The position numbers and the translations under genes are program-made. From Podarcis muralis (taxonomy: Eukaryota): a stretch of DNA of 64,000 nucleotides. Below, piece after piece: positions 40,331 to 62,724 of this stretch (position 1 is its first letter; the number at the start of each line of letters is the position of its first letter). Under the pieces are notes generated by a model. The model was not told the DNA's origin, searched no databases, and saw nothing but the letters and a program-made list of their open reading frames with translations. The stretch lies in the NCBI RefSeq assembly GCF_964188315.1, contig NC_135667.1, forward strand, positions 16,182,001 to 16,246,000. Direction: 5' to 3'.

Positions 40331-41850
40331 ACTTGACCCAGGGATCTGCCCTAGAATAGCATTTTTAGCCAGGTCTAAAGTCTGGATCTTGAAATGTCTG
40401 CCTATGTGTTAGAAAGTGGGAGATGGACTCGTGTTTGTTTGTGTGCGTGTAAGGGTAGATGAAACTGCACCAGTAGGTTTCCTGAGTAACACTGCAAGCC
40501 TAACCCCATTTACCCGAAAGTAAGCACCACTGAATTCCATAGGCCTTAATTCTGGGTAGGCATGGTTAGGAGACTACGTACTGCAAACCCCACGAAAACC
40601 CTTAACACTGTTTCTCTCTTCATATGGATGCAGCCTACATATTTCATAACCCAGGGGCTTCTTGGTTCTTGTGGTAGATATCACACCGTCTTCCTGTGCA
40701 AATTTTTCTCTTCCCAAGATGTTTTTCAGAGGGATTCCTCATCTTGCAACGCTTAACCCAGGGATGGGGAAACCTGTGGCCCGCCAGATGTTATTGGACT
40801 CCAATCAGCCCAGCCAACATGGCCAATGGTCAAGGATAGTGGATGTTGTGGTCCAGTAGCATCTGGCGGGCCAAAAGCTTCTCCATTCCTCCTTATTCTG
40901 CCTCTTTTCTGTCTGCAGCAGATGGAGCAAATTCTGCCTGGATTCTGTCTCTCCCTGCAGAGAGCAAGAACAAAGTGGAAAACCCACAGGAAGATGGTGC
41001 ACAGCCACGTCCCATTTCCTCAAGTAGCTCCAGCGGGAGTGGAAATAAGGTGCTGCAGAAAGGAGGCTCTGCGAAAGACCAGCCGACTTTTTGTAAAGGG
41101 GACTTGAAGGACCCTCTGCGGGCCTTGTGTGGCAAAACAAAATCCTACAAATGCCCCGACTGCGGGAAAAATTACCGCAGGAGCACAGACCTCTTGAGGC
41201 ACCAGAGGACCCACACGGGAGAAAGGCCTTATCTGTGCCTGGACTGTGGGAAGAGCTTCAGTCGGAGTTCAATCCTCCTGGAGCACCAGAGAATCCATAC
41301 AGGTGAGAAGCCATACAAATGCAGCCACTGCGGGCAAGGATTTAGCCAGAGCTCCAACTGTAAGCAGCATGAGAGGACTCATGGGAAGGAGAAAAGGAGT
41401 GACCCAATACACTGGGGATCAACTTGGCAAAGGACAGAGGTTCAGAGGCGTGGGCCTAAAAGCCTGAAAAGAATTGATGAAGGTGCAAAAGCTGGACTCA
41501 GATCTCAGTCTCCAGGGGGAAGTTCCTCATGGAGCTCAAAGATGGTGATGAAGTATCAGAAAAGCCATAGGATGGAGAAGCCCTACAGGTGCCCTGAGTG
41601 CGGGAAATGCTTTGCACGTAGCACGGATTTCATCCGGCACCACATTACCCACACAGGAGAAAAGCCCTACACGTGTGTGAAATGTGGCAAGAGTTTTACG
41701 CGCAGCTCGGTCCTCATTGAGCACCAGCGAATCCACACGGGAGAGAGGCCCTACAAGTGTCGGCTGTGCGGAAAGGGCTTCAGTCAGAACTCTAACCGTA
41801 ACCAACACGAGACAATCCACCAGGCTAAGAAATCTCCTGACGCTTCCTGA
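40153..41850 (+). CDS. C2H2 zinc-finger protein with 6 fingers in two 3-finger clusters; no KRAB or SCAN domain seen
   Basis: The main exon is an open frame to TGA at 41848-41850 with six C-x2-C-x12-H-x3-H fingers and TGEKP/TGERP linkers. In-frame phase-1 acceptors lie at 40919, 40922 and 40961. A candidate first coding exon, 40153-40279 (gctATGG...CCAG|gtgagc, phase 1), sits in a CpG island. AATAAA is at 42138. The first exon is inferred. Confidence 0.85.
40759..40890. mobile_element. Palindromic hAT MITE in the intron of the 6-finger ZNF gene
   Basis: cagggatggggaaacctgtggcccgccagatg ... catctggcgggccaaaagcttctccattcct, with inverted arms. Confidence 0.7.
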
Positions 41851-44205: not shown

Positions 44206-44399
44206 TGGGGGAATGCACACAATTTCTGTTGTTGAAGAGGGCTGTGTGTCATGCACCTTGCCCCCAAGCCCCTTTGTGACTACCCTGCTGATCTCCCTCC
44301 GGGCAGTGGAGTGTCCCGCTGTCCTTGCCCTCAGGCAGCGAAATGTCTTGGGCCGACCTTTGCTCCCAGGCATGTTCCCATGCACTAGTCCCGTGTTAA

Positions 44400-45451
44400 C
44401 GGTGCACCTTCCGGATTCGAACGGACAAGAGGCGATCGTTACTCTGCACATTCTCGGAAGCAGCATTCTCTCCCCGCCTCCCCCCGTCCCTATTCCACGG
44501 CGCGGTTTCTGCAAGAGCTCCCTTGCCACGAGGAAACACGTTTCTTCGGGGTGGCCTCTAGTAGAAGCTCCGGATCAGCGGCTCCGAGTGCTCTCTCTTC
44601 CTCCTCGCCCCCGCCCCTATTTCAAAACCCGAATACTCGTCGCTTGCGGGGCTGGAGAAGGGAGGGAGGACTCCTGGGTCCACCCCCTGCTCGCGTCTGG
44701 CAGGAACAGGCGCCGCTGCTGCAGTTGCCACTCTCCCTGTCTTGCAGACCTCTCCACCAATGAGCGAGAACGAGGCAAGGCAACGTTGGCGAATCTGCGA
44801 GGCGCACCGCCCCTCCGCCACCCTCCTCTCGACGTCTAACATTCTCCCCGTCCGTCCCCCCCCCCCCGCCATCGGAGCTCCCCCTCCCCACTCAGCAGGG
44901 TCTCTTCTCGGGGAGGGAAGAGGCGCAAAAGCGCAGCCGGAGCCGATTCCGCCGCCCATCTCGAGGCGCTTGCCAAAGGGCGAGGAGCCTCCGGATCCCG
45001 TTGATCGGCTGTGCTAGCCACCTCTGCGCCCTCCTCCGCATCATCATCATCTTCATCATCACCCTCGGCAGCCCCACCATTCCTCCCCTGCTCCAGAGAG
45101 GCCCGGGTGAGAGGGGAGGGGAGCCAGCCTGGGTCGCAGGAAGCAGTCACTCCTTGGCTCAACTTCCTTCCCGGACTTGGTACTGGCCCCGGGTGGGGAA
45201 TCCGTCTCCCCTTCCTTACCCAGCCCCTTATCCTGCTGCCAGCTACCCTAACTCTCCATAGGGACGTGGCGGAGAAAAAGGGTGTCTACCACGTGGGTTG
45301 CCAGAAGCAGCTGTTGCTTGGAATAGAGAGAGGTGTGCATCACAGCACAACCCCCCCCCCCGCCTTGGATTTCTAAGACGCAATTAGGCTAAACTTACGG
45401 AGCTAGTGATATTAGCGAGCAGACACACGCCAAGACAGAGAGACAAAAGAG
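44400..45451 (+). promoter_or_regulatory. CpG-island promoter and non-coding 5' exon(s) of ZNF771
   Basis: CpG-rich, with CCAAT at 44757 and no ATG on the plus strand from about 44765 to the strong donor AGAG|GTAAGT after 45451. A possible internal intron runs 45107-45261. Confidence 0.72.
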
Positions 45452-45971
45452 GTAAGTTTTAAGAGCTCGAGACCCCTGGGGGTTGCGGGGAAGGGTGGAG
45501 CTTATTTGGGGCCATGGCCTGCCCAGGGATCCCTGTGCAGTTGTGATACCTACACATTAGTAGTGCTGTGTGCTTCTGAGCATGTGAAGGGTGCAGAAAT
45601 AAGCCAGTCGTTCTCTATGAAGACAGCACTTTGCATCAGGGATTAGTGACAGGATTTCCAGGCAGACTTGAGTCATACCATGGCCTCATCCATCTTCCCA
45701 TACTATATTCAAACCAAGTGGATTCATCCTTGTTCATTGGGGGCAATAGGAAAATAGATCTAAATATCTCCTGAATCTAAGCTAGGTGGTGGCCTCACAG
45801 GGTAGTTGTGAGTCAAAAAAAGCTACCCTGACTTGTAGGGGGTTTGATGGTCTACAAATAAGAGTTGTTTAAAGAGGACTTAATTTTCTAATAACTATGC
45901 CTAGGGTGGAGAGCCTTGGTCACTTACCTTTGTTTCTCCCTCAAAAGCCACTCACTTCCGCACTTAAATTA

Positions 45972-48900
45972 ATGATGGATGAGGACAAGGAGGACATGAA
46001 AGAAGAGAAGTCAGAGGGGATCCCTATATCTGGCACACCAACCGAGGTCAAAGATGGGGGTGTGGTAAGTAACAGTGGCACTTTGACACTGAATGTTTCC
46101 CCAGATGCCTCTGGGTTTAAAAGAAAGACTCCTTTGTGGAAAACAGACCAAACCATCATGTCCGTTTCTGCTCAGACTGATATGACTAAAGCAATCTCAT
46201 GCTGGGTGAACAGTACCATGGGAAGATCTGGTGCCTAAAATATGTAAGGAGCTAATTTGGTCACCTAATGGATTTGTTTGTTTGTGTATGTATTTGTTTT
46301 CCCATTCTGTACCTTCAGAAATTGGATGCAGACAGGCCATTGATGAAGAATGCGGGAACATCTCGGGGATCCTCAGAGATACGGCGGAAAGGGCTGCTGA
46401 CTAGAGTAAAGAAGGAAAGGGAAAGGGCCCAGGAGAGCAAGGTGTGGCTATACAAGATCTCCAGGGACAGACCTATGAGGTTTTTTTGTTCGGAAGGAGG
46501 GTGGTGAGGTGGAAGGAAGGAAAAATCAGGACTAGAGGTTTGTGTGTCTGTCCTGGGTGTAATTTGCTTCCTACTAAATAATTCTGGGACAGAAAAGGCC
46601 CCATAAAAGACTGAGCCACACACAGATTTGAGGGAATAGGTTGGAAAAACCAGGATTCTGAGATCCAATAGGAATGGAGCAGGACTTCTTGGTTTGCAGG
46701 GAGTGTTTATTGATTGCCTTTCTATCCCATCCTTCTTCAAGGAGCTCAGGGTGATGAACACGTTCCTTTTGCCCCCTCCCCAATTTATCCTCACAACAAC
46801 CCTGTAAGGTCTGTTAGGCCAAGGGGTAGTGACAGCCTAAGAGCACCCAGCAAGTTTCATGGCCATGTGAGAATTGGAGCCCAGGCTTCCCTGATCCTAG
46901 TGTAGCATTCTGACCACTATGCTGTGCTGGCTCCTTGTGTTCTGCCCTGTCCAGATTACACAGGGTTGGTTGGTGTATTATTGTGCCTGACTTCATAGAA
47001 AAACAATATAGTGTAGGGTTATAGTGTTGGATTAAGGGGTGGGGAGAGCAGGATCAGATATTCAAGCTTGATGCTGAACCGTGACCTTGGACCAGTCATA
47101 TTTCATTCTCTCACACACATTCTCTCTCAAGCTAGCCTGTCTCACAGGGTTATTGTGAGGATAATGTGGGTGAGGGCTAGAACAGCTTATACTGCCTTGA
47201 GTTCCTTGGAGAAAATATGGAATAGAAATCTAATGAATAAAAATAACGTAAAATCCGCTCCCAGCTACTTTACCTCTTCTTTCAGCCTCTGCCACCTTCT
47301 CCAAGGAAATGGACATGGCTTGCCACTTCATGCAAAACAGAAAAGGTGGCAACAGTGAAGGAGGAAGAGCCTCCAATTGTGGTGAAGATGCTTGAGATCC
47401 CAGTGGGTGACAACATGGTGAGTAATGAAAGCAAACCAATGACTAGATCTCAGGGCTACATCTATGCAGTGGTACCTCTGGTTATGAACTTAATTCGTTC
47501 CAGAGGTCTGTTCTTAACCTGAAACTGTTCTTAACCTGAGGTACCACTTTAGTTAATGGGGCCTCCCACTGCCGGCGTGCCACCAGTGCACAATTTCTGT
47601 TCTCATCCTGAGATAAAGTTCTTAACCCAAGGTACTACTTTCAGGTTAGCGGAGTCTGTAACCCGAAGTGTTTGTAACTCGAGGTGTTTGTAACCCAAGG
47701 TACCACTGTATAGCAGAAAAGGATACACTGTATAAAGTGCTCCTGTTTACATCCGCACCCCTTTCTAACGTATAATATTCTTCATTAGCATTGCCAGCCT
47801 TCCAACCAGCCTTTATAAAAAGCAGCTTGATTTGGATTTTTATGGAGAAAATATGTCATTGGTCTCCTTACTTAAAGATTGCTGCCGCCACCGTCCTTCA
47901 GTTGATATTAGAACTGAATACAGATTTACAGATTGATAAAGCACTCCAAGCATTGTAGCTCTGTAGGGAATAGTGTTTTTCTAACAACTGTCAGCACCAT
48001 TAACAAACTACAGCTCCCAGGATTCTTTGGGGGAAACCATGGCTATTTAAAGTGGCATGGTACCACTTTAAATGTATGGTGTGAATGTGGCATAAATAAC
48101 TTGCAGAAAACAGTCTTAAAAGGAGGTTGCATAACTTACTTACAAACTGCATAGTTATCCCAAAGAGGATGATAAACATGACGTATAGGTGACAAATTTC
48201 AGTTCAGCGTCATCTTTGCTACTATACAAGATAATGGGGTTGGCAGAGAGAAGAGAATCCATCAATCAGGAGTTGCCATAGCACACTGGATAAGATTTTC
48301 TTATGTACTCTGGAACATGACACACCAGCATGTACACTGAAGTGATTGGCCTGGTTATATTTTGTCCACAACTTGGAAAGGGGAATTTTAGAGGCGTGAA
48401 TGTGAGTCATCTCTACACCTGGTAGGTGGAAACCATTTGGGTATCCAAGTCTTGGAACATGACAGAAATGGATGCTAAACAGTTTTGCCAGATACAAGCA
48501 CTCTTTGCTCCAACTTTTCATCACAGTGATTTTTATCTATATCTATATCCCATGGAAAGTGTTGTTTGCTGATTTCTGAAGAATGAGCCACTGCTAAATG
48601 TATGAGAGAATCCATTTGCTGGTTAGTTGGCAACCATATTCTTTATTAGAGATAAAAACAAGATCTTGCCTGCAAGAGTATTGTTCTTCAACTTTTAAAG
48701 GCAAAATCTGAATTATTTTGTTCTTCCCTCTTATTAAGAAACTAAGAATTGGAGAGATGGAAAGGAACAAAGAGCAGTTGTGGCACACTATGGAATGGGC
48801 TATGTACTCACATTGTTGCTTTTTGCTAGTACAGTAGATAGTGTGAGAAAACTGCCACACAGGAAGCTCAGCGGCCTACCTATAAGCAAGAAAACCCACA

Positions 48901-51900
48901 CGTTCTGCATGCTGAGTGCTACATATATGGTTATCATTTTCAGTATTCTTCTATAAGTTGCTTTCCTTTGGCAAAAGTCAGCACCGGTGGTGATTTTGAT
49001 ACTTTAAAAATGGCTTTTTGAGTTGGCTGCAGAGAACACATCCTGTGAGGAGAAATTGACAAAGTGGTGTCTCCCCTGGCAACCATTTTTTACCTCCTTA
49101 GCCTTAGGCATGCACAACATTTGATTTGTTAGCCGTCTGTGATGACCCTTGGTGACCTCCTGGGACAGTAAAACACAGTAGGGCTGTCCAGGATCATATA
49201 GGTCACACTATATGGTTGATGAGATGTACTTGGTTTAGTGCAGGGGTCACCAGAGCAGCAGCTGCCAGTGTACCCACAGTACCTCCTATGGCGCCCACAA
49301 AAGGTCTCAGTAAATATCCCCTCAAAATCCAGTGTATGAGACTGTTTGATCTTCCTGCTCAGTACCTCTTTGCATTTGTTCATCCTCTTCTGCACAACCC
49401 CATAACAGCCATTTTGTGACGGGCACCAATGGTACTTCTGCAGTATTCCAAATGTGCTCACTGCCTCCAAAAGGCTGGTAACCTCTGGTTCAGGTGGGCT
49501 TAAGGCCATCTTGGCCTGTCTCAGCATTTGAGAACTATTCAACTCTAGAGGGATAAGATATGTGTAAAAATGCTCACTTCTTGCTGTTTTTGCCTTTTCT
49601 AGCCAGAGTGTTCATTCTCCCAGAATAGGTTAATAATGGAGGATGGCAGTGAGAAAGAACTGATAATTAGAAGAAGAGTGAAGAAGGAAAAAGATGAGGA
49701 AGAGAATCTGGAATTTGAAGTGGAGGTAAGGAGGGTTTCCGCAGGTGGGAAATCAGTGAGTGGAGATGAAGATGGGAAGGTGAGATGTTTTATTTGGGTG
49801 AGGGGAAAGAAGGACCAGCTTTCAGGAAAAGAAAGGATTGCTTAACTCAGCCTTTGAAACACTGGACCCTCAAATGTTTTAGACTACAGCTCCCATCAGC
49901 CCTAGCCAGCACAGCTGGTTTGGAATTGTAGTCAAAAACATGTGGAGGGCACCACGTTTGCAACGGCTAGTGAAATCATTGTCTTGGCCAAACTTGCTCC
50001 AGCTTAGTTCTACTGCCTTGCAGGACTTGTTACCTGAGGAAGAGATGAAGGCTGAGGTGGAGGAGCAGAAGGCTCAAGAATTCGAGATGCAAAAAGCCAC
50101 CATCCCGATAGATGGGATTTTGGTGAGTACTGGGGGTAGCATAGTCGAGGGAATGTCAGGAGAGCTTGGAGGAGAGACTTGAGGTAAGTGGTAGTGGGTG
50201 GTGAGGTGGTTCTGTTGTACTGTTTCCATGATCTTTGGGAATGTTGGATTTCTCCTGTCAGAGGCCTGATCTGCACTATACATTTAAAGCAGTATTGTAC
50301 CACTTTAAACAGTCATGGTTTCCCTCAAAGAATCCTGGGAACTGGAGTTTGCTATGAGTGCTGAGAGTTCCTAGGAGACCCCTGTTCCCTCACAAAGCTA
50401 TAAATCTCAGAGCCATTCCCTCTTCCCAAGGAAATATAGGAATTGTAGCTGTATGATGGGAACATGGGTCTCCTAACAACTCTGGACACCCTTTTCAGGA
50501 TTCTTTGGCAGAAGCCATGCCTGTTTAAAGTGGTACGATACTGCTTTAAATGTATGGCACTGATGGGGCCAGACTGCCAAGGCTGCATCCTGATGTTAGC
50601 CTTTTTTTTGGTGAGTCTTGGCAGCTGTATGGCAGGGGGGACGATGATGAAAGAAGTGGTATTTGGCAATTCTTCTGGCATTGTACAGGACAACATCTTA
50701 CTAATGTTAGGCCCTTGTAAGTCACTGAAACTCAAGAGTGCAATGAAGGAATAGTAAAAAAAAAAAGTCTACATGCTGAATCCAAGATTCACAAAAAAGG
50801 CTTGGCATCAAGATGAAGCCTTAACAATATGGCCAGAGAACCAGCAAGGGAAAATTTGGCCACATGCCTCTTTTCTTATCACGCTGCTGTAGCATTGGGG
50901 CCACCACTAGTAGGGACCCTCATTGTTGTTGTTGTTTAATCATTTAGTCGTGTCTGACTCTTCGTGACCCCATGGACCAGAGCACGCCAGGCACTCCTGT
51001 CTTCCACTTCCTCCGGCAGTTTGGTCAAACTCATGCTGGTAGCTTCGAGAACGCTGTCCAACCATCTCATCCTCTGTTGTCCCCTTCTCCTTGTGCCCTC
51101 AATCTTTCCCAAGGGACCCTCTTTAGCCTTGTCTAATCTCCTGTCCATCCCCAGTTCACTTGCACACAATATATACTCCCTTTACAAGTAGGTCAGGTTA
51201 TATCATCGGCAGCCTGTTAAGCCAAAAGAGAGGCTTGCCAAGCATATATTAACTTTGACCTCTGGTTTTGACCAACTCTTAATACACTTTAGTTCCTGCT
51301 CTTATCAAAAGATGATTTGTAAAACTATGATACAGTACAAAGATGGACTTCTTTAAAAAATAATGACTTGTTTATGTGGCAGTTTCCAGGCTAGCACCCC
51401 TAATATCTGTTCCCAGAGTGCCTTTTTTTTTACAGCAGGCTAAGCTGTCCTAATCATTTCTTCCATTTCTGTAGGTGCCCTCCTCCTCCTCACACCCCAA
51501 TACCTGTAGTGTTTGTGGCAAGAGTTTTAGCCGTCGCTCAAACTTGGCCAAGCACCAGATCATCCACACGGGTGAGAAGCCTTACCGCTGCAATGACTGT
51601 GGCCGCAGCTTCAACCAGAGCTCAGCCCTCACCAAGCACCAGCGGACACACACTGGGGAGCGTCCCTACGTCTGCGGAGACTGTGGCAAGGCCTTCACGG
51701 CCAGCTCAAACCTCCTCCAGCACCGCCGTTTTCACACAGGAGAGCGGCCCTATCGGTGTGAGCTGTGTGGCAAGGCCTTCTCCCAGAGCTCCAACTACAA
51801 CCTGCACCGCCGCAGCCACACAGGAGTCACACCTTATCAGTGCAATGTGTGTGGCAAACGCTTTACCGGGAGTTCCTGCCTTACTCGCCACCAGAGGACC

Positions 51901-52494
51901 CACACAGGGGAGAAGCCATACCAGTGCCAGGAATGTGGCAAACGCTTTTCTGGCAGCTCCACTCTGGCCAACCACCGGCGCACCCACACAGGTGAGAAGC
52001 CTTACGGCTGTGCTGAGTGTGGCAAGAGGTTCACCCACCACTCCAACCTAGTGGACCACTGGCGGGTGCACACAGGAGAGAAACCATATGTTTGCACCGA
52101 GTGCGGGAAGAGCTTTCGGCTTAGCTCCCACATCATTCGCCACCGCCGCACTCATGCCAACGCCCGCGGTGCTAGCCTGGCATATGACATCCTTGGCAGC
52201 GTCAATACAGCTGGCAGTGATGCCAGCATTAGTGCCCATCACATCAGCCTCCTCTATGAAAATGCCAGCAGCACTGACGGTGGCAGCCCTCATGGGTCCG
52301 GTCACAATGCCCTGTGTGCCAATAGCAGCATCTCCAATGGCAACAATGATACCGATGGGGAAGAGGGCAGCCGGCTTCTCATTTGCAGCCAGTGTGGTAA
52401 AGGTTTCCGCCTGGAGTCTGGCCTTCAAGAAGACTCCGTGCTGGGTGAGGGACCCTATACTTGTACTGAGTGTGGCACCAGCTGTTGGACGTAG
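45972..52494 (+). CDS. ZNF771: Zinc finger protein 771 orthologue with 8 C2H2 fingers and an expanded acidic N-terminus (about 522 aa if all exons are included)
   Basis: The last exon, 51475-52494 (ag|GTG CCC), has finger helices [56 protein letters not shown] and LSSHIIRH. These match in order the recalled human ZNF771 helices (RRSTLAKH, QKSALTKH, AASNLRQH, QSSNYAQH, GSSCLARH, QSSALAKH, HRSNLAEH, LSSHFIRH), and both proteins end in C..CG+.F+L...C.EC. Inferred upstream phase-0 exons are 45972-46064 (exon from 45948), 46319-46441, 47286-47417, 49624-49725 (alternative acceptor 49603) and 50024-50122. Confidence 0.85.
46715..46932 (-). mobile_element. Squam3/Ther1-like SINE
   Basis: ctttctatcccatccttcttcaaggagctcaggg...cctcacaacaaccctgtaagg...cattctgaccactatgctgtgctggctc. 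Confidence 0.65.
47005..47237 (+). mobile_element. Squam3/Ther1-like SINE
   Basis: atagtgtagggttatagtgttgga...ctagcctgtctcacagggttattgtgagga...gccttgagttccttggagaaaatatggaatagaaat. Confidence 0.65.
47467..47708. mobile_element. Tc1/mariner (Tigger-like) MITE
   Basis: TIRs CAGTGGTACCT ... AGGTACCACTG|TA, with internal gttcttaacc and tgtaacc repeats. Confidence 0.8.
50263..50570. mobile_element. Long-TIR non-autonomous DNA element (probably PIF/Harbinger-like)
   Basis: Inverted arms tacatttaaagcagtattgtaccactttaaacag and ctgtttaaagtggtacgatactgctttaaatgta. A half copy is at about 47940-48090. Another small hAT MITE is at about 49858-49970. Confidence 0.65.
50922..51111 (-). mobile_element. 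5'-truncated BovB/RTE LINE with a 10-bp TSD
   Basis: The minus frame reads [52 protein letters not shown], the RTE/BovB C-terminus. It has a (CAA)n tail and is flanked by AGGGACCCTC at 50912-50921 and 51112-51121. Confidence 0.9.
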
Positions 52495-52844
52495 CCAGAC
52501 TGTGGTGTAGCTGAACAGCAAATCTTCCATAGCCCTCCAGGATCTCTGGCTGGATCAGAAAGCAAAGCCCAAGCACAGGAGAGAGATTTATCTGTGACTA
52601 AATCAATAATGGACCAGAATGGAGAAGTGTATTCTGATCTCCATTTTTTAATGGGTTTGGGGAAATGCTTGTATTGAACTAAGATTGGATCTGCTTCCAT
52701 AGAATACTATGTTCACCTCCAAAGATCTGTTCCTGCTTTTGCTGTGAAGGAAAGGAGTAAATAATATTGCAGAGTATGTGCATGTGCACGCGTGTTTGTT
52801 TGTGGTGGCAATCTTGATTTCTAGGACAGAATGGGTTTCTAGTG

Positions 52845-60592: not shown

Positions 60593-61077
60593 AGTTAGTC
60601 CATAAATACAACTCAAGGATATTGTGCTGAGAATGAGACCCTGTAGAAGGGCCATATTTATTCAGAAGTGGGCCAGTTCAGGAGTCTTGTCTTGCTGGCC
60701 TGCAGCAACTTTCATAATAGCTGTCATGGAGAGGCTCATCTAGCTCATCCTACACTTTCTAGGTTGGAAACTACAATGAGGTGGGAAAATAAATTCATTG
60801 TGGTTGAGAAAGGCTCTTCACATATGCACTGGCCTAAGCTGCAGTAGTGCCCACATTCAGGACCCAAGGCCAATGCAGAAAGAACAGAGAGGAAGGAAGA
60901 AGATGTGGACTTGGTAAAAAATATATCTAAAGACTAACTGGCAGCAAATGATGCAGCATAGATGGAGCTATGGTGGTTAAAAGACTTGTGGAAGCAGAAT
61001 GTGAGGATTGATTGTCGTTGGGGATTGATGGTAGATGAATCAATGTGAATTTCTTATTTCTACTAGGAAACAGAAAG

Positions 61078-62724
61078 ATGGATACAGCTGAAAAACCTGC
61101 AAGCAAAAGGGAAGATGTAGTATCAGGAATAAAATCTCAGAGAAGTTTAGCAACCCCAGTAGCAAAGCATCGGCGAGTAGGCAGGGTAATCTGTGGTGTT
61201 TGTGGAAAGAGCTTTGTCAAGACCTGTGAACTGTTTGCCCACCAGCGGACCCACACAGGGGAGAAGCCATACGAGTGCTCAGATTGTGGCCGTTGCTTTT
61301 CTGTCCAGTCCGCATTGGCCAGTCACCAGAGTATCCACACAGGAGAGAAGCCTTACAGATGTCAGGAGTGTGGCAAGAACTTCCGGCTAAAGAGCAACTT
61401 GAGCCGCCATCAACGAGCTCATGATGGCATAAGACCATTCCGATGTGAATACTGCGGGACCACCTACAGCACCAAAGCTCACCTGGTCTGGCACCTGAAC
61501 ACCCATACAGGTGAGAAGCCATACAAATGTACTGAGTGCTGGAAGCGTTTTGGAGAGATCTCCTTGCTCGTAGAGCATCTTCTTTCACACCAGGGTGATG
61601 GTAGTGGTGGAAAAAATGAAATTGCCTCTGCAGGACGTTTAGGTAGTGGGAACCTTCACCACTGCGATGATTGCGGGAAGAACTTCTGCCGGAGCACCAC
61701 GTTAGCTGAACACCGTCGCATTCACACTGGTGAGCGTCCTTTTGCCTGCGGGGAGTGTGGCGAGCGGTTCATGCGACGGGCTCTCTACAACGAACATGTC
61801 CGCACTCACTCTGAAGAGGGCCCACCCAACCTATGTGTAGCCTGTGGTAAATCTTTCACCAAGCGCTATTCCCTTCTCCAGCATCAGAGGTCACACACAG
61901 GAGAAAAGCCCTACCAGTGCCCCGATTGTCCAAAAAGCTTCATTGCCAGCTCTGCCTTGACACAGCACCGGCGGATACACACCGGAGAGACACCCTACCC
62001 ATGTCCAGATTGTGGGCGCAGTTTTAGCCAGAAATCGGTGCTCACAACTCATCGGAGACTTCACACAGGCGAGAGGCCATACAAATGCCAGGAGTGTGGG
62101 AAAGGCTTTAGTCAGAGTTCAGCGCTCACTCAGCATCTCCGGACTCACACTGGTGAATCCCCTTACAGCTGCCAAGAGTGTGGGAAAAGTTTTAGTGGTA
62201 TGTCAGCTCTCAAGCGACACCACCTCACCCATACAGGGGAACGCCCCTTTCGCTGCGATGAATGTGGCAAAGGTTTCAAGCAGAGCTCCACGCTGGTCCA
62301 GCACCAGAGGATTCACACTCACGAGAAGCCTTATGCCTGTCTCCAGTGCAACAAAAACTACAGCCAACGGGCTGCTCTTGCCAAGCACCTGAGGACTCAC
62401 ACCAAGGGAGCCTTGCTTTCTGGCACATGCAGTGAGCCAATAGACATCAGGGTTTACAAAGAGCCTTTTGTCCAACCCCAAGAAGAGGAGAACAATACAG
62501 GGAATGACATGGAGGAAGAAGCTGATGAGGTCGTGGTGCTCCCTCCGGGGACGTGGGATGCTGAGGTAAAAGAAGAGTCAGAGCTTCAGTGGGAGAACGA
62601 CATACCATTTGCAGAAACGGGGTCGCTCTCATGGGTGAAAAAGGAAGAGTCAGATGAGGCCCAGGTAGAAAGGAGAGAACTGTCAACAGTCTCTCTGCAC
62701 ATCAAAGAGGAACCAGATGACTGA
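61078..62724 (+). CDS. C2H2 zinc-finger protein with 14 fingers (5+2+7) and an acidic C-terminal tail; no KRAB or SCAN domain; 548 aa
   Basis: The CDS is a single exon after an acceptor (tttctactag| at 61067), with a strong Kozak AAGATGG at 61078. It has 14 intact fingers with TGEKP-type linkers and a stop TGA at 62722-62724. Downstream AATAAA signals are at 63079, 63686 and 63709. I did not recognise an orthologue. Confidence 0.92.
   Translation: MDTAEKPASKREDVVSGIKSQRSLATPVAKHRRVGRVICGVCGKSFVKTCELFAHQRTHTGEKPYECSDCGRCFSVQSALASHQSIHTGEKPYRCQECGKNFRLKSNLSRHQRAHDGIRPFRCEYCGTTYSTKAHLVWHLNTHTGEKPYKCTECWKRFGEISLLVEHLLSHQGDGSGGKNEIASAGRLGSGNLHHCDDCGKNFCRSTTLAEHRRIHTGERPFACGECGERFMRRALYNEHVRTHSEEGPPNLCVACGKSFTKRYSLLQHQRSHTGEKPYQCPDCPKSFIASSALTQHRRIHTGETPYPCPDCGRSFSQKSVLTTHRRLHTGERPYKCQECGKGFSQSSALTQHLRTHTGESPYSCQECGKSFSGMSALKRHHLTHTGERPFRCDECGKGFKQSSTLVQHQRIHTHEKPYACLQCNKNYSQRAALAKHLRTHTKGALLSGTCSEPIDIRVYKEPFVQPQEEENNTGNDMEEEADEVVVLPPGTWDAEVKEESELQWENDIPFAETGSLSWVKKEESDEAQVERRELSTVSLHIKEEPDD

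What the first reader, a model, noticed from the sequence alone, without database searches (positions are those of the whole stretch)
45948..50122. ZNF771 N-terminus built from five phase-0 cassette exons, each carrying one acidic psi-K-x-E (SUMO consensus) motif
Five small exons (93-132 coding nt) all have good GT-AG signals and all are phase 0-0, so any subset can splice in frame to the finger exon. Each encodes one psi-K-x-E in an acidic context: dMKEEk, rVKKEr, tVKEEe, rVKKEk and eMKAEv. From memory, human ZNF771 has one such coding exon (..LVKGEEDEGEEKYEVVKLKIPMDNKE|VP). Pieces of it are recognisable in several exons here: [49 protein letters not shown]|VP. Exons 3 and 5 share AGA GT(A/G) AAG AAG GAA, and exons 4 and 6 both end in IP-x4-5, which suggests a duplicated exon pair. 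Exon 5 also has its own strong-Kozak ATG (ATAATGG, 49636). Inference: this is a lineage-specific exon amplification that could let splicing set the number of SUMO acceptor sites on a KRAB-less zinc-finger factor.
Basis: partly seen in the sequence, partly recalled or inferred. Interest (0 to 1): 0.75.

Follow-up and report, generated by a model that had tools for sequence, protein, structure and literature searches.

The report
Lizard ZNF771 repeated N-terminal exons
The five small in-frame exons are real, but they are the already-annotated N-terminus of wall-lizard ZNF771, shared by all sampled squamates; three of them are ancient copies of one short module, and only two of the five SUMO-type motifs are conserved.

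Summary
Observation confirmed. Five exons (45948-46064, 46319-46441, 47286-47417, 49603-49725, 50024-50122) are open only in frame 0. Each has a length divisible by 3 and AG/GT signals, and each carries one psi-K-x-E (5 seen, 0.93 expected, p=0.0014).

- The window is a Podarcis. RefSeq already models this gene as ZNF771, 529 aa, colinear with all five exons plus the 8-finger exon.
- The same six-coding-exon, all-phase-0 layout occurs in Zootoca, P. raffonei, Sceloporus and the gecko Eublepharis. Skink, anguid, anole and snake proteins share the N-terminus, some without exon 2 or 4.
- The tuatara orthologue carries three homologous modules. The layout is therefore squamate-wide and the modules at least lepidosaur-old.
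- No annotated isoform in five species skips exons 3-6. Variants use shifted splice sites or a start in exon 3.
- Only the exon 5 motif (12 of 12 squamate proteins) and the exon 6 motif (11 of 12) are conserved. Tuatara has none.
- Exon amplification is supported in altered form. Exons 4, 5 (with its ancestral 3' extension) and 6 are paralogous (profile z 5.3-8.1). The proposed 3/4 versus 5/6 pairing is not supported.

AlphaFold2 gives no fold. No RNA reads were obtained, and no non-lepidosaur orthologue was retrieved. SUMOylation is untested.

The parts
44250..45340 (+). CpG island and non-coding 5' exon(s) of the gene
   Evidence: GC is 0.61-0.65 and CpG o/e 0.69-0.85. A P. lilfordi model (P0123) maps upstream exon pieces at 44760-45108 and 45272-45352. 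Blocks at 44670-45333 align to the gecko locus.
45948..46064 (+). Exon 2. ATG at 45972, 31 codons, phase 0 donor. MKEE motif at 45996-46007.
   Evidence: Identical in P. raffonei and P. lilfordi proteins. Conserved DNA island against gecko and Sceloporus. The motif is present only in lacertids. Exon absent from snake models.
46319..46441 (+). Exon 3, 41 codons, phase 0-0. VKKE at 46406-46417. Internal Met at 46343 is the start of the annotated 490-aa isoform.
   Evidence: P0129 and P0125 start MKNAG. The motif is not conserved: RARKE, RVRKE, RVKKG and RLKKG elsewhere.
47286..47417 (+). Exon 4, 44 codons, phase 0-0. This is module A. VKEE at 47355-47366; module core at 47370-47417, ending IPVGDNM.
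   Evidence: The orthologous exon is present in gecko and Sceloporus loci. It is absent from Anolis, Elgaria and snake proteins. The motif is lost in Zootoca and P. raffonei, which read EKEE. Paralogy to e6: hhalign E=8.5e-5, z=8.1.
49603..49725 (+). Exon 5, 41 codons, phase 0-0. This is module B. Conserved VKKE at 49678-49689. An alternative acceptor at 49624 gives the annotated 522-aa isoform. In-frame ATG at 49636.
   Evidence: P0126 lacks the first 7 residues. R-V-K-x-E-K is invariant in the squamate proteins aligned. 88.8% DNA identity to gecko over 89 nt.
49726..49755 (+). Ancestral 3' extension of exon 5. It is open and in frame ([10 protein letters not shown]) and is followed by GTGAGT at 49756. 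It is intronic in lacertid models and a possible alternative donor.
   Evidence: Homologous residues are coding in Sceloporus, Phrynosoma, Anolis, Elgaria and skink (VRRVSxDG), and in tuatara (KLRVTMDG). Sequence and downstream donor are conserved in Zootoca and P. raffonei.
50003..50023 (+). In-frame stretch upstream of exon 6 (LSSTALQ), preceded by CAG. It corresponds to coding residues in skink and tuatara and is a possible ancestral acceptor.
   Evidence: tblastn of skink and tuatara units extends to 50003. The CAG is changed in P. raffonei (CAT) and Zootoca (TAG), so use of this acceptor in lacertids is doubtful.
50024..50122 (+). Exon 6, 33 codons, phase 0-0. This is module C. Conserved MKAE at 50045-50056; module core at 50075-50122, ending IPIDGIL.
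   Evidence: K, E and the QK..IP core are invariant across squamates. All three tuatara units hit this exon by tblastn (E 0.011, 8.7e-4, 0.001 in the 64-kb window).
51475..52494 (+). Exon 7. Eight C2H2 fingers plus a C-terminal tail with two degenerate CxxC pairs, then the stop codon.
   Evidence: Pfam zf-C2H2 matches 8 stretches at E=7.7e-55. 98% identical to Zootoca ZNF771 and 84-86% to gecko, anole and Sceloporus.
47965..48081 (.). Interspersed repeat copy in intron 4. Related copies lie in intron 6 at 50263-50390 (inverted) and 50496-50570. It is not part of any exon.
   Evidence: the repeat finder reports D1, I1 and I2. None overlaps an exon.

Best explanation
This is the genuine, already-annotated N-terminal coding region of ZNF771 in a Podarcis wall lizard.

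Five symmetric phase-0 exons encode about 190 residues rich in acidic residues and lysine. AlphaFold2 gives no confident fold for this region, which is consistent with intrinsic disorder. It sits in front of a single exon that carries eight C2H2 fingers.

In every principal annotated isoform all five exons are included together. The isoform variation on record comes from small in-frame shifts of splice sites and from a start in exon 3, not from exon skipping.

Exons 4, 5 and 6 are diverged copies of one module: an acidic run, then [F/Y]-[E/K]-V-x-K-x-x-I-P-x-D/G. This amplification predates the squamate-tuatara split. Later changes were loss of exon 4 or exon 2 in some lineages and sliding of the exon 5 donor and exon 6 acceptor.

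Two psi-K-x-E motifs with acidic residues downstream, in exons 5 and 6, are conserved throughout squamates. They are the only plausible conserved SUMO acceptor sites. The other three motifs in this window are young and lineage-restricted.

What is shown: the anatomy, the conservation and the paralogy. What is inferred: disorder, SUMOylation and any effect on transcription.
For: - Exon anatomy.
- Colinearity with RefSeq proteins. P. muralis X1 (P0127) matches e3, e5 and e6 exactly. P. raffonei and P. lilfordi match e2 and e5 exactly. Length is 529 aa = 31+41+44+41+33+339.
- The same exon layout and phases in Eublepharis, Sceloporus, Zootoca and P. raffonei loci.
- Against gecko and Sceloporus, only the exons and the promoter align at the DNA level, apart from e3.
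- Pooled pN/pS for e2-e5 is 0.27-0.36 within lacertids.
- Annotated isoforms differ only by shifted splice sites or start.
- Tuatara orthologue P0165 has three modules.
- Module paralogy: A-C E=8.5e-5, z=8.1; B-C E=3.7e-4, z=6.2; A-B E=2.7e-3, z=5.3; 0 of 150 column shuffles reach the score; all three in one register. A squamate e6 HMM hits tuatara unit A with p<0.0005.
- Motif conservation.
- AF2: mean pLDDT 52.6, pTM 0.09, no secondary structure.
- No Pfam domain in any of the five exons, and no KRAB in any orthologue.
Against: - No RNA evidence was obtained here.
- Within lacertids, introns are nearly as conserved as exons (94-98%). Exon-specific constraint is therefore visible only at deeper divergence.
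- Single-sequence exon similarity is weak: e4-e6 p=0.86, e5-e6 p=0.005, e3-e5 DNA p=0.004 uncorrected. Squamate-only profiles gave hhalign probabilities of 1-5%. The paralogy case depends on including tuatara and the extended exon 5.
- The units were delimited by me.
- The tuatara exon structure could not be fetched.
Confidence: 0.8

Rival explanations
1. The five exons are independently skippable cassettes produced by a recent lineage-specific amplification. Alternative splicing sets how many SUMO acceptor sites the factor carries.
For: - All exons are phase 0-0, so any subset stays in frame.
- The window has five psi-K-x-E motifs against 0.93 expected.
- Annotated Anolis isoforms drop 12-residue segments at the ends of e3 and e5. 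A Podarcis isoform omits the e2 coding part.
Against: - No annotated isoform in five species skips e3, e4, e5 or e6.
- The layout is shared from geckos to lacertids, and the modules by tuatara.
- Three of the five motifs are not conserved, even between Podarcis species and Zootoca.
- The Anolis segments that are spliced out carry no psi-K-x-E.
Confidence: 0.08
2. The conserved function of the modules is a short linear binding motif, the [F/Y]EV-x-K-x-x-IP-x-D/G core, for an unknown partner. The psi-K-x-E matches are a by-product of a K/E-rich disordered sequence and are not SUMO sites.
For: - The IP-x-D core is the part shared by all three modules and by tuatara, which has no psi-K-x-E at all.
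- Q-K-x-x-I-P is invariant in squamates.
- P. raffonei has lost the hydrophobic residue of the e6 motif (EKKAE).
Against: - V-K-x-E-K in e5, and K and E in e6, are invariant or nearly so over the whole squamate sample, beyond what composition explains.
- No known motif class fits the core. eh1, CtBP-type and SUMO-interaction motifs were considered by eye; the residues I recalled as defining them are not conserved in A1/A2.
Confidence: 0.3
3. One or more of the small exons are gene-prediction artefacts: chance open frames with chance splice signals that are not in the mature mRNA.
For: - No reads were examined.
- e3 gives no blastn island against gecko or Sceloporus.
- Some database models of this gene are plainly faulty: P0121, P0122 and P0154 lack the finger array, and P0123 and P0128 translate UTR or intron.
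Against: - Every exon keeps its frame, length class, acceptor and donor in gecko, Sceloporus, Zootoca and P. raffonei.
- e3 residues K41, R60, K63 and E66 are invariant across squamates.
- e2, e4, e5 and e6 are DNA conservation islands amid unalignable introns.
Confidence: 0.04

Closest known systems
RefSeq ZNF771 models of lacertid lizards: Podarcis muralis XP_028560921.1 (X1, 529 aa), P. raffonei XP_053219508.1, Zootoca vivipara XP_060137689.1
   Same: Colinear with e2-e7 of the window. They have the same exon boundaries and phases and the same 529-aa product length. e3, e5 and e6 are identical to P. muralis X1.
   Different: A few substitutions, for example one residue each in e2 and e4 against P. 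muralis. The window is therefore another Podarcis genome or species. The databases describe no module structure or motif content.
ZNF771 of other lepidosaurs: gecko, skink, iguanians, anguid, snakes, and tuatara A0A8D0GVL0
   Same: The eight-finger array is 80-86% identical in the squamates, and the tuatara array shares the same helix signatures. The C-terminal CxxC tail is shared. The N-terminus is built from the same modules, and the loci checked have five phase-0 exons.
   Different: - Exon 4 is absent in Anolis, Elgaria and snakes.
- Exon 2 is absent in snakes.
- The exon 5 donor and exon 6 acceptor lie at different in-frame positions.
- Tuatara has a long insertion in the tail and no psi-K-x-E.
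Human/mammalian ZNF771 (16p11.2), as named by NCBI orthology
   Same: That would equal a single module.
   Different: It would have one module instead of three, and far fewer N-terminal residues.
SUMO consensus sites with downstream acidic residues (NDSM type) and 'synergy control' motifs in transcription-factor regulatory regions (from general knowledge)
   Same: psi-K-x-E lies in a region without predicted fold and is followed by acidic residues (VKKEKDEEE in e5, MKAEVEE in e6). There are multiple copies per protein.
   Different: No conjugation data exist for this protein. A ZNF771 search of one large endogenous SUMO-site paper's held supplements found nothing. Only two copies are conserved.
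Tandem duplication of symmetric exons that encode repeat modules in disordered regions (general mechanism)
   Same: Adjacent exons are in the same phase and encode recognisably related modules.
   Different: The copies are old and strongly diverged, with only a core of about 12-20 aligned residues left. Exon boundaries have since slid.

Membership tests
ZNF771 orthologue group (as annotated in squamates) | Single large exon with eight tandem C2H2 fingers whose recognition-helix signatures match annotated ZNF771 | tested here: met
   Pfam finds 8 zf-C2H2 stretches. The exon is 98% identical to Zootoca ZNF771 and 84-86% to Sceloporus, gecko and Anolis ZNF771. Seven signature strings are shared only by the lepidosaur ZNF771 proteins among the 264 proteins fetched; these include three long fused models that carry other names.
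ZNF771 orthologue group (as annotated in squamates) | C-terminal tail with two degenerate CxxC pairs, ending ...CTECGxSCWT | tested here: met
   Present in the e7 translation and in all lepidosaur orthologues.
ZNF771 orthologue group (as annotated in squamates) | No KRAB or SCAN domain | tested here: met
   No Pfam hit in e2-e6. PF01352 and PF02023 are absent from the precomputed domains of P0002-P0010.
Orthology with human ZNF771 | Reciprocal best match and shared synteny with 16p11.2 genes | not tested
No mammalian sequence was obtained.
Cassette (skipped) exons | Both inclusion and skipping isoforms observed for the exon | tested here: not met
   Annotated isoforms of P. muralis, P. raffonei, Anolis, Eublepharis and Vipera never lack e3, e4, e5 or e6 as a whole. 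Only database models were checked. Junction reads were not available.
Tandem exon duplication | Neighbouring exons of the same phase with sequence similarity above a composition-preserving null | tested here: met
   Met for e4, e5 (extended) and e6 at profile level, with z 5.3-8.1 and 0 of 150 shuffles. e3-e5 is marginal. There is nothing for e2.
SUMO consensus / NDSM site | psi-K-x-E with acidic residues within about 10 residues downstream, in an accessible region | tested here: met
   The sequence criterion is met in e5 and e6 and conserved. The region has no confident predicted fold.
SUMO consensus / NDSM site | Lysine actually conjugated to SUMO | not testable with these tools
   No proteomic record was found. 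This needs an assay.
Intrinsically disordered effector region | No stable predicted fold; low-complexity charged composition | tested here: met
   AF2 on a 12-sequence alignment gives mean pLDDT 52.6, pTM 0.09 and no DSSP elements. A shallow alignment limits the weight of this result.

The most novel reading that the evidence does not exclude
Lepidosaurs expanded a single ancestral module of about 25 residues (psi-K-x-E, an acidic run, then [F/Y]EV-x-K-x-x-IP-x-D) into three exon-encoded copies. Mammals would keep one copy. In squamates two copies then fixed SUMO-type lysines. The result would be a multivalent regulatory platform on an otherwise conserved DNA-binding array, whose valency has since been trimmed differently by exon loss and splice-site sliding in snakes, anoles and anguids.
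Probability: 0.3. Interest if true: 0.4.

Novelty: new member of a known kind. Interest (0 to 1): 0.22.

Why it matters
The practical result is mostly a correction. The gene model is already in RefSeq, is not lacertid-specific, and shows no sign of cassette splicing, so it should not be carried forward as a splicing-tuned SUMO switch.

Two modest points are new.
- Three of the exons are ancient copies of one short module, and tuatara is the link that makes this visible.
- The exon 5 donor and exon 6 acceptor have slid in frame within formerly coding sequence.

This gives a small, clean example of how a region with no predicted fold in a conserved zinc-finger factor evolves by exon duplication, exon loss and splice-site sliding. 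It also points to two specific lysines and one IP-x-D core as the residues worth mutating if anyone studies ZNF771, a factor with essentially no functional literature.

Tried and rejected
- **RNA evidence.** Later searches used database proteins, window ORFs outside the stretch, or local scripts.
- **Spliced model.** Exons were searched one by one by reference, and the colinear database proteins (P0127 and others) stood in for the joined product.
- **Outgroups.**
  - A word search with the N-terminus found only squamates.
  - The full HMM search of 1.84 billion representatives with the N-terminal profile gave 13 hits, all of them squamate proteins or unlabelled short fragments that closely resemble them. 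That library holds one protein per 50%-identity cluster, so the blank says little.
  - A search with finger 8 plus the tail found tuatara but no turtle, bird, crocodilian or mammal orthologue.
  - The ESM Atlas gave only generic ZNF clusters.
- **Tuatara locus.** Not on record.
- **Squamate-only comparisons.** Single-sequence and squamate-only profile comparisons of exons were weak.
- **SUMO proteomics.** There is no ZNF771 entry in the held supplements of PMC6018634. A second paper is not held.
- **Motif classes.** eh1, CtBP-binding and SUMO-interaction motifs were considered by eye for the IP-x-D core. I rejected them because the residues I recalled as defining them are not conserved in A1/A2.
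- **Exon 5 ATG.** The internal ATG as a start was rejected. The Met is lacertid-only and no model uses it.
- **TE origin.** A transposable-element origin of the exons was rejected. The repeats lie in introns only.
- **Flanking ZNF exons.** Comparison with the Anolis fused 'ZNF629' model showed only generic finger similarity.
Full report
**1. What is in the sequence.**

Reading 45500-52500 and locating boundaries by script confirm five small exons upstream of one large zinc-finger exon.

| Exon | Coordinates | Size | Note |
|---|---|---|---|
| e2 | 45948-46064 | 93 coding nt | ATG at 45972 |
| e3 | 46319-46441 | 123 nt | |
| e4 | 47286-47417 | 132 nt | |
| e5 | 49603-49725 | 123 nt | |
| e6 | 50024-50122 | 99 nt | |
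| e7 | 51475-52494 | 339 codons plus stop | finger exon |

Each small exon has a length divisible by 3. Each is open only in frame 0, follows a pyrimidine tract plus AG, and is followed by GT. Pfam finds eight C2H2 fingers in e7 and nothing in e2-e6.

Each small exon has exactly one [VILMF]-K-x-E. That is five observed against 0.93 expected from per-exon shuffles (P=0.0014). The chance that all five exons carry at least one is P=0.0002. The observation therefore stands, with the caveat that the test is post hoc.

**2. The gene is already annotated.**

A word search with e7 returned squamate proteins named ZNF771. Identity was 98% to Zootoca and 80-86% to Sceloporus, two geckos, Anolis, Elgaria and two snakes.

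The 90% cluster around the Zootoca protein holds Podarcis muralis, P. raffonei and P. lilfordi entries.
- P. muralis X1 (529 aa) matches e3, e5 and e6 of the window letter for letter.
- P. raffonei and P. lilfordi match e2 and e5.
- 529 equals 31+41+44+41+33+339.

The window is therefore a Podarcis genome, and the five-exon N-terminus is the standard RefSeq model. The colinear database proteins served in their place.

**3. Cassette splicing is not supported.**

Annotated isoforms show the following.
- P. muralis X2 (522 aa) uses an acceptor 21 nt inside e5, at 49624 in the window.
- P. muralis X3 and P. raffonei X2 (490 aa) start at the Met inside e3 (46343 in the window), so e2 is not coding in those isoforms.
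- Anolis X1-X6, Eublepharis X1-X2 and three Vipera models differ by 1-16-residue in-frame shifts at exon ends, and one Anolis form has a different start.

None lacks e3, e4, e5 or e6 as a whole. I could not look at reads. Constitutive inclusion therefore rests on gene models.

**4. The layout is not lineage-specific in the narrow sense.**

I mapped proteins onto fetched loci for Eublepharis, Sceloporus, Zootoca and P. raffonei. All four show the same six coding exons, and every one of the N-terminal five is phase 0-0 with similar length.

Protein alignments add skink, Phrynosoma, Anolis, Elgaria, Gekko and snakes.
- e4 is missing in Anolis, Elgaria and snakes.
- e2 is missing in snakes.

Against the gecko and Sceloporus loci, only e2, e4, e5, e6, e7 and a promoter block at 44670-45333 align by blastn. 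Introns do not align, and e3 is too diverged at the DNA level.

Among lacertids everything is 94-98% identical, so there is no exon/intron contrast there. Pooled pN/pS for e2-e5 is 0.27-0.36.

**5. Tuatara and the modules.**

A region search with finger 8 plus the tail found the Sphenodon orthologue P0165. Its N-terminus contains three stretches ending IPMD, VTMD and IPMD, each preceded by an acidic run and [F/Y]-[E/K]-V.

By position and sequence they correspond to e4, e5 and e6.

tblastn of each tuatara unit against the window hits e6 (E 0.011, 8.7e-4, 0.001). Unit B also hits e5 together with the 30 nt after its donor.

That 30 nt (49726-49755) is open and in frame, and is followed by GTGAGT. 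It is homologous to residues that are coding in Sceloporus, Phrynosoma, Anolis, Elgaria, skink and tuatara. The lacertid and gecko donor therefore lies inside formerly coding sequence.

Likewise, 50003-50023 upstream of e6 corresponds to coding residues in skink and tuatara. Its CAG is changed in P. raffonei and Zootoca.

**6. Testing the duplication idea.**

Single-sequence comparisons within the window are weak.
- e5-e6 protein: p=0.005.
- e3-e5 DNA: p=0.004, driven by the RVKKE pentapeptide and uncorrected for ten pairs.
- e4-e6: p=0.86.

Squamate-only exon profiles gave hhalign probabilities of 1-5%.

I then delimited units by homology, used the long form of e5, and included tuatara. All three alignments fall in the same register over the core.

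| Pair | hhalign E-value | hhalign probability | z against column-shuffled null | Shuffles reaching the score |
|---|---|---|---|---|
| A-C | 8.5e-5 | 60% | 8.1 | 0 of 150 |
| B-C | 3.7e-4 | 36% | 6.2 | 0 of 150 |
| A-B | 2.7e-3 | 11% | 5.3 | 0 of 150 |

A squamate e6 HMM finds tuatara unit A with p<0.0005.

I conclude that e4, e5 and e6 are ancient paralogues.

**7. The SUMO-type motifs.**

Results across 12 squamate proteins and tuatara:
- The e5 motif is present in 12 of 12 squamates (V-K-K/T-E-K).
- The e6 motif is present in 11 of 12. P. raffonei has lost the hydrophobic residue.
- The e2 motif is lacertid-only.
- The e3 C-terminal motif is present as psi-K-x-E in lacertids only; Eublepharis has the related VKKD.
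- The e4 motif is present in P. muralis and this window, but not in P. raffonei or Zootoca.
- Tuatara has none.

Another motif near the start of e3 recurs in several lineages but is absent here.

So two conserved candidate acceptor lysines exist, both with acidic residues downstream. The 'one per exon' pattern is a feature of the P. muralis group only.

No literature links ZNF771 to SUMO. One large endogenous SUMO-site data set has no entry for it in the files held.

**8. Nature of the region.**

AlphaFold2 on the 12-sequence alignment gives mean pLDDT 52.6, pTM 0.09 and no secondary structure. This is consistent with a disordered region that carries short motifs.

The exons are not derived from repeats. 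The interspersed repeat copies lie in introns 3, 4 and 6.

**9. What remains open.**

No turtle, bird, crocodilian or mammalian orthologue was obtained. I therefore cannot say whether three modules are a lepidosaur gain or an older state reduced in mammals. The human comparison in the finding is from memory and untested.

The tuatara exon structure is unknown.

SUMO conjugation, and any partner of the IP-x-D core, are inferences.

**10. Verdict.**

This is a real and ordinary gene structure that is already annotated. It contains a modestly interesting ancient triplication of an exon-encoded module and two conserved SUMO-type sites. The splicing-tuned, lineage-specific reading is not supported.

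Noticed in passing
window 40843-41850 (+) and 61045-62724 (+): Two further long open frames with C2H2 finger arrays flank ZNF771 on the same strand. Pfam gives about 4-5 fingers for the first and 10-11 for the second. The C-terminal tail of the downstream frame also carries psi-K-x-E strings (EVKEE, VKKEE) around 62536-62670. Comparison with an Anolis fused 'ZNF629' model showed only generic finger similarity.
   Followed up: partly
Database proteins P0121 (Lerista), P0122 (Phrynosoma), P0154 (a snake genome, GCA_009733165.1): Three independent gene models join the ZNF771 N-terminus directly to the C-terminal tail and leave out the whole finger array. This is probably an annotation artefact rather than a real finger-less isoform, but that was not checked.
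   Followed up: no
window 47965-48081, 50263-50390, 50496-50570; also 46779-46808 / 47141-47170: Copies of short interspersed repeats lie in introns 3, 4 and 6, in direct and inverted orientation, at 79-87% similarity. They were not classified.
   Followed up: no
L006 and L007 (Logan contigs SRR12196012, SRR12196015), protein P0146: In an unidentified squamate, the exon 5 / exon 6 interval is short and stays open in frame. One ORF therefore runs through e5, the intron and e6.
   Followed up: no
L003 11538-11764 (Zootoca, minus strand): A CDC26 (ANAPC_CDC26) gene lies about 2.3 kb downstream of the ZNF771 stop in Zootoca. The corresponding part of the window was not examined.
   Followed up: no
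P0165 (tuatara), residues about 430-620: The tuatara orthologue has an insertion of about 150 residues in the tail between finger 8 and the terminal CxxC pairs. It is rich in N, V, I and D, with repeated 'VN...IN' strings, and is absent from squamates.
   Followed up: no
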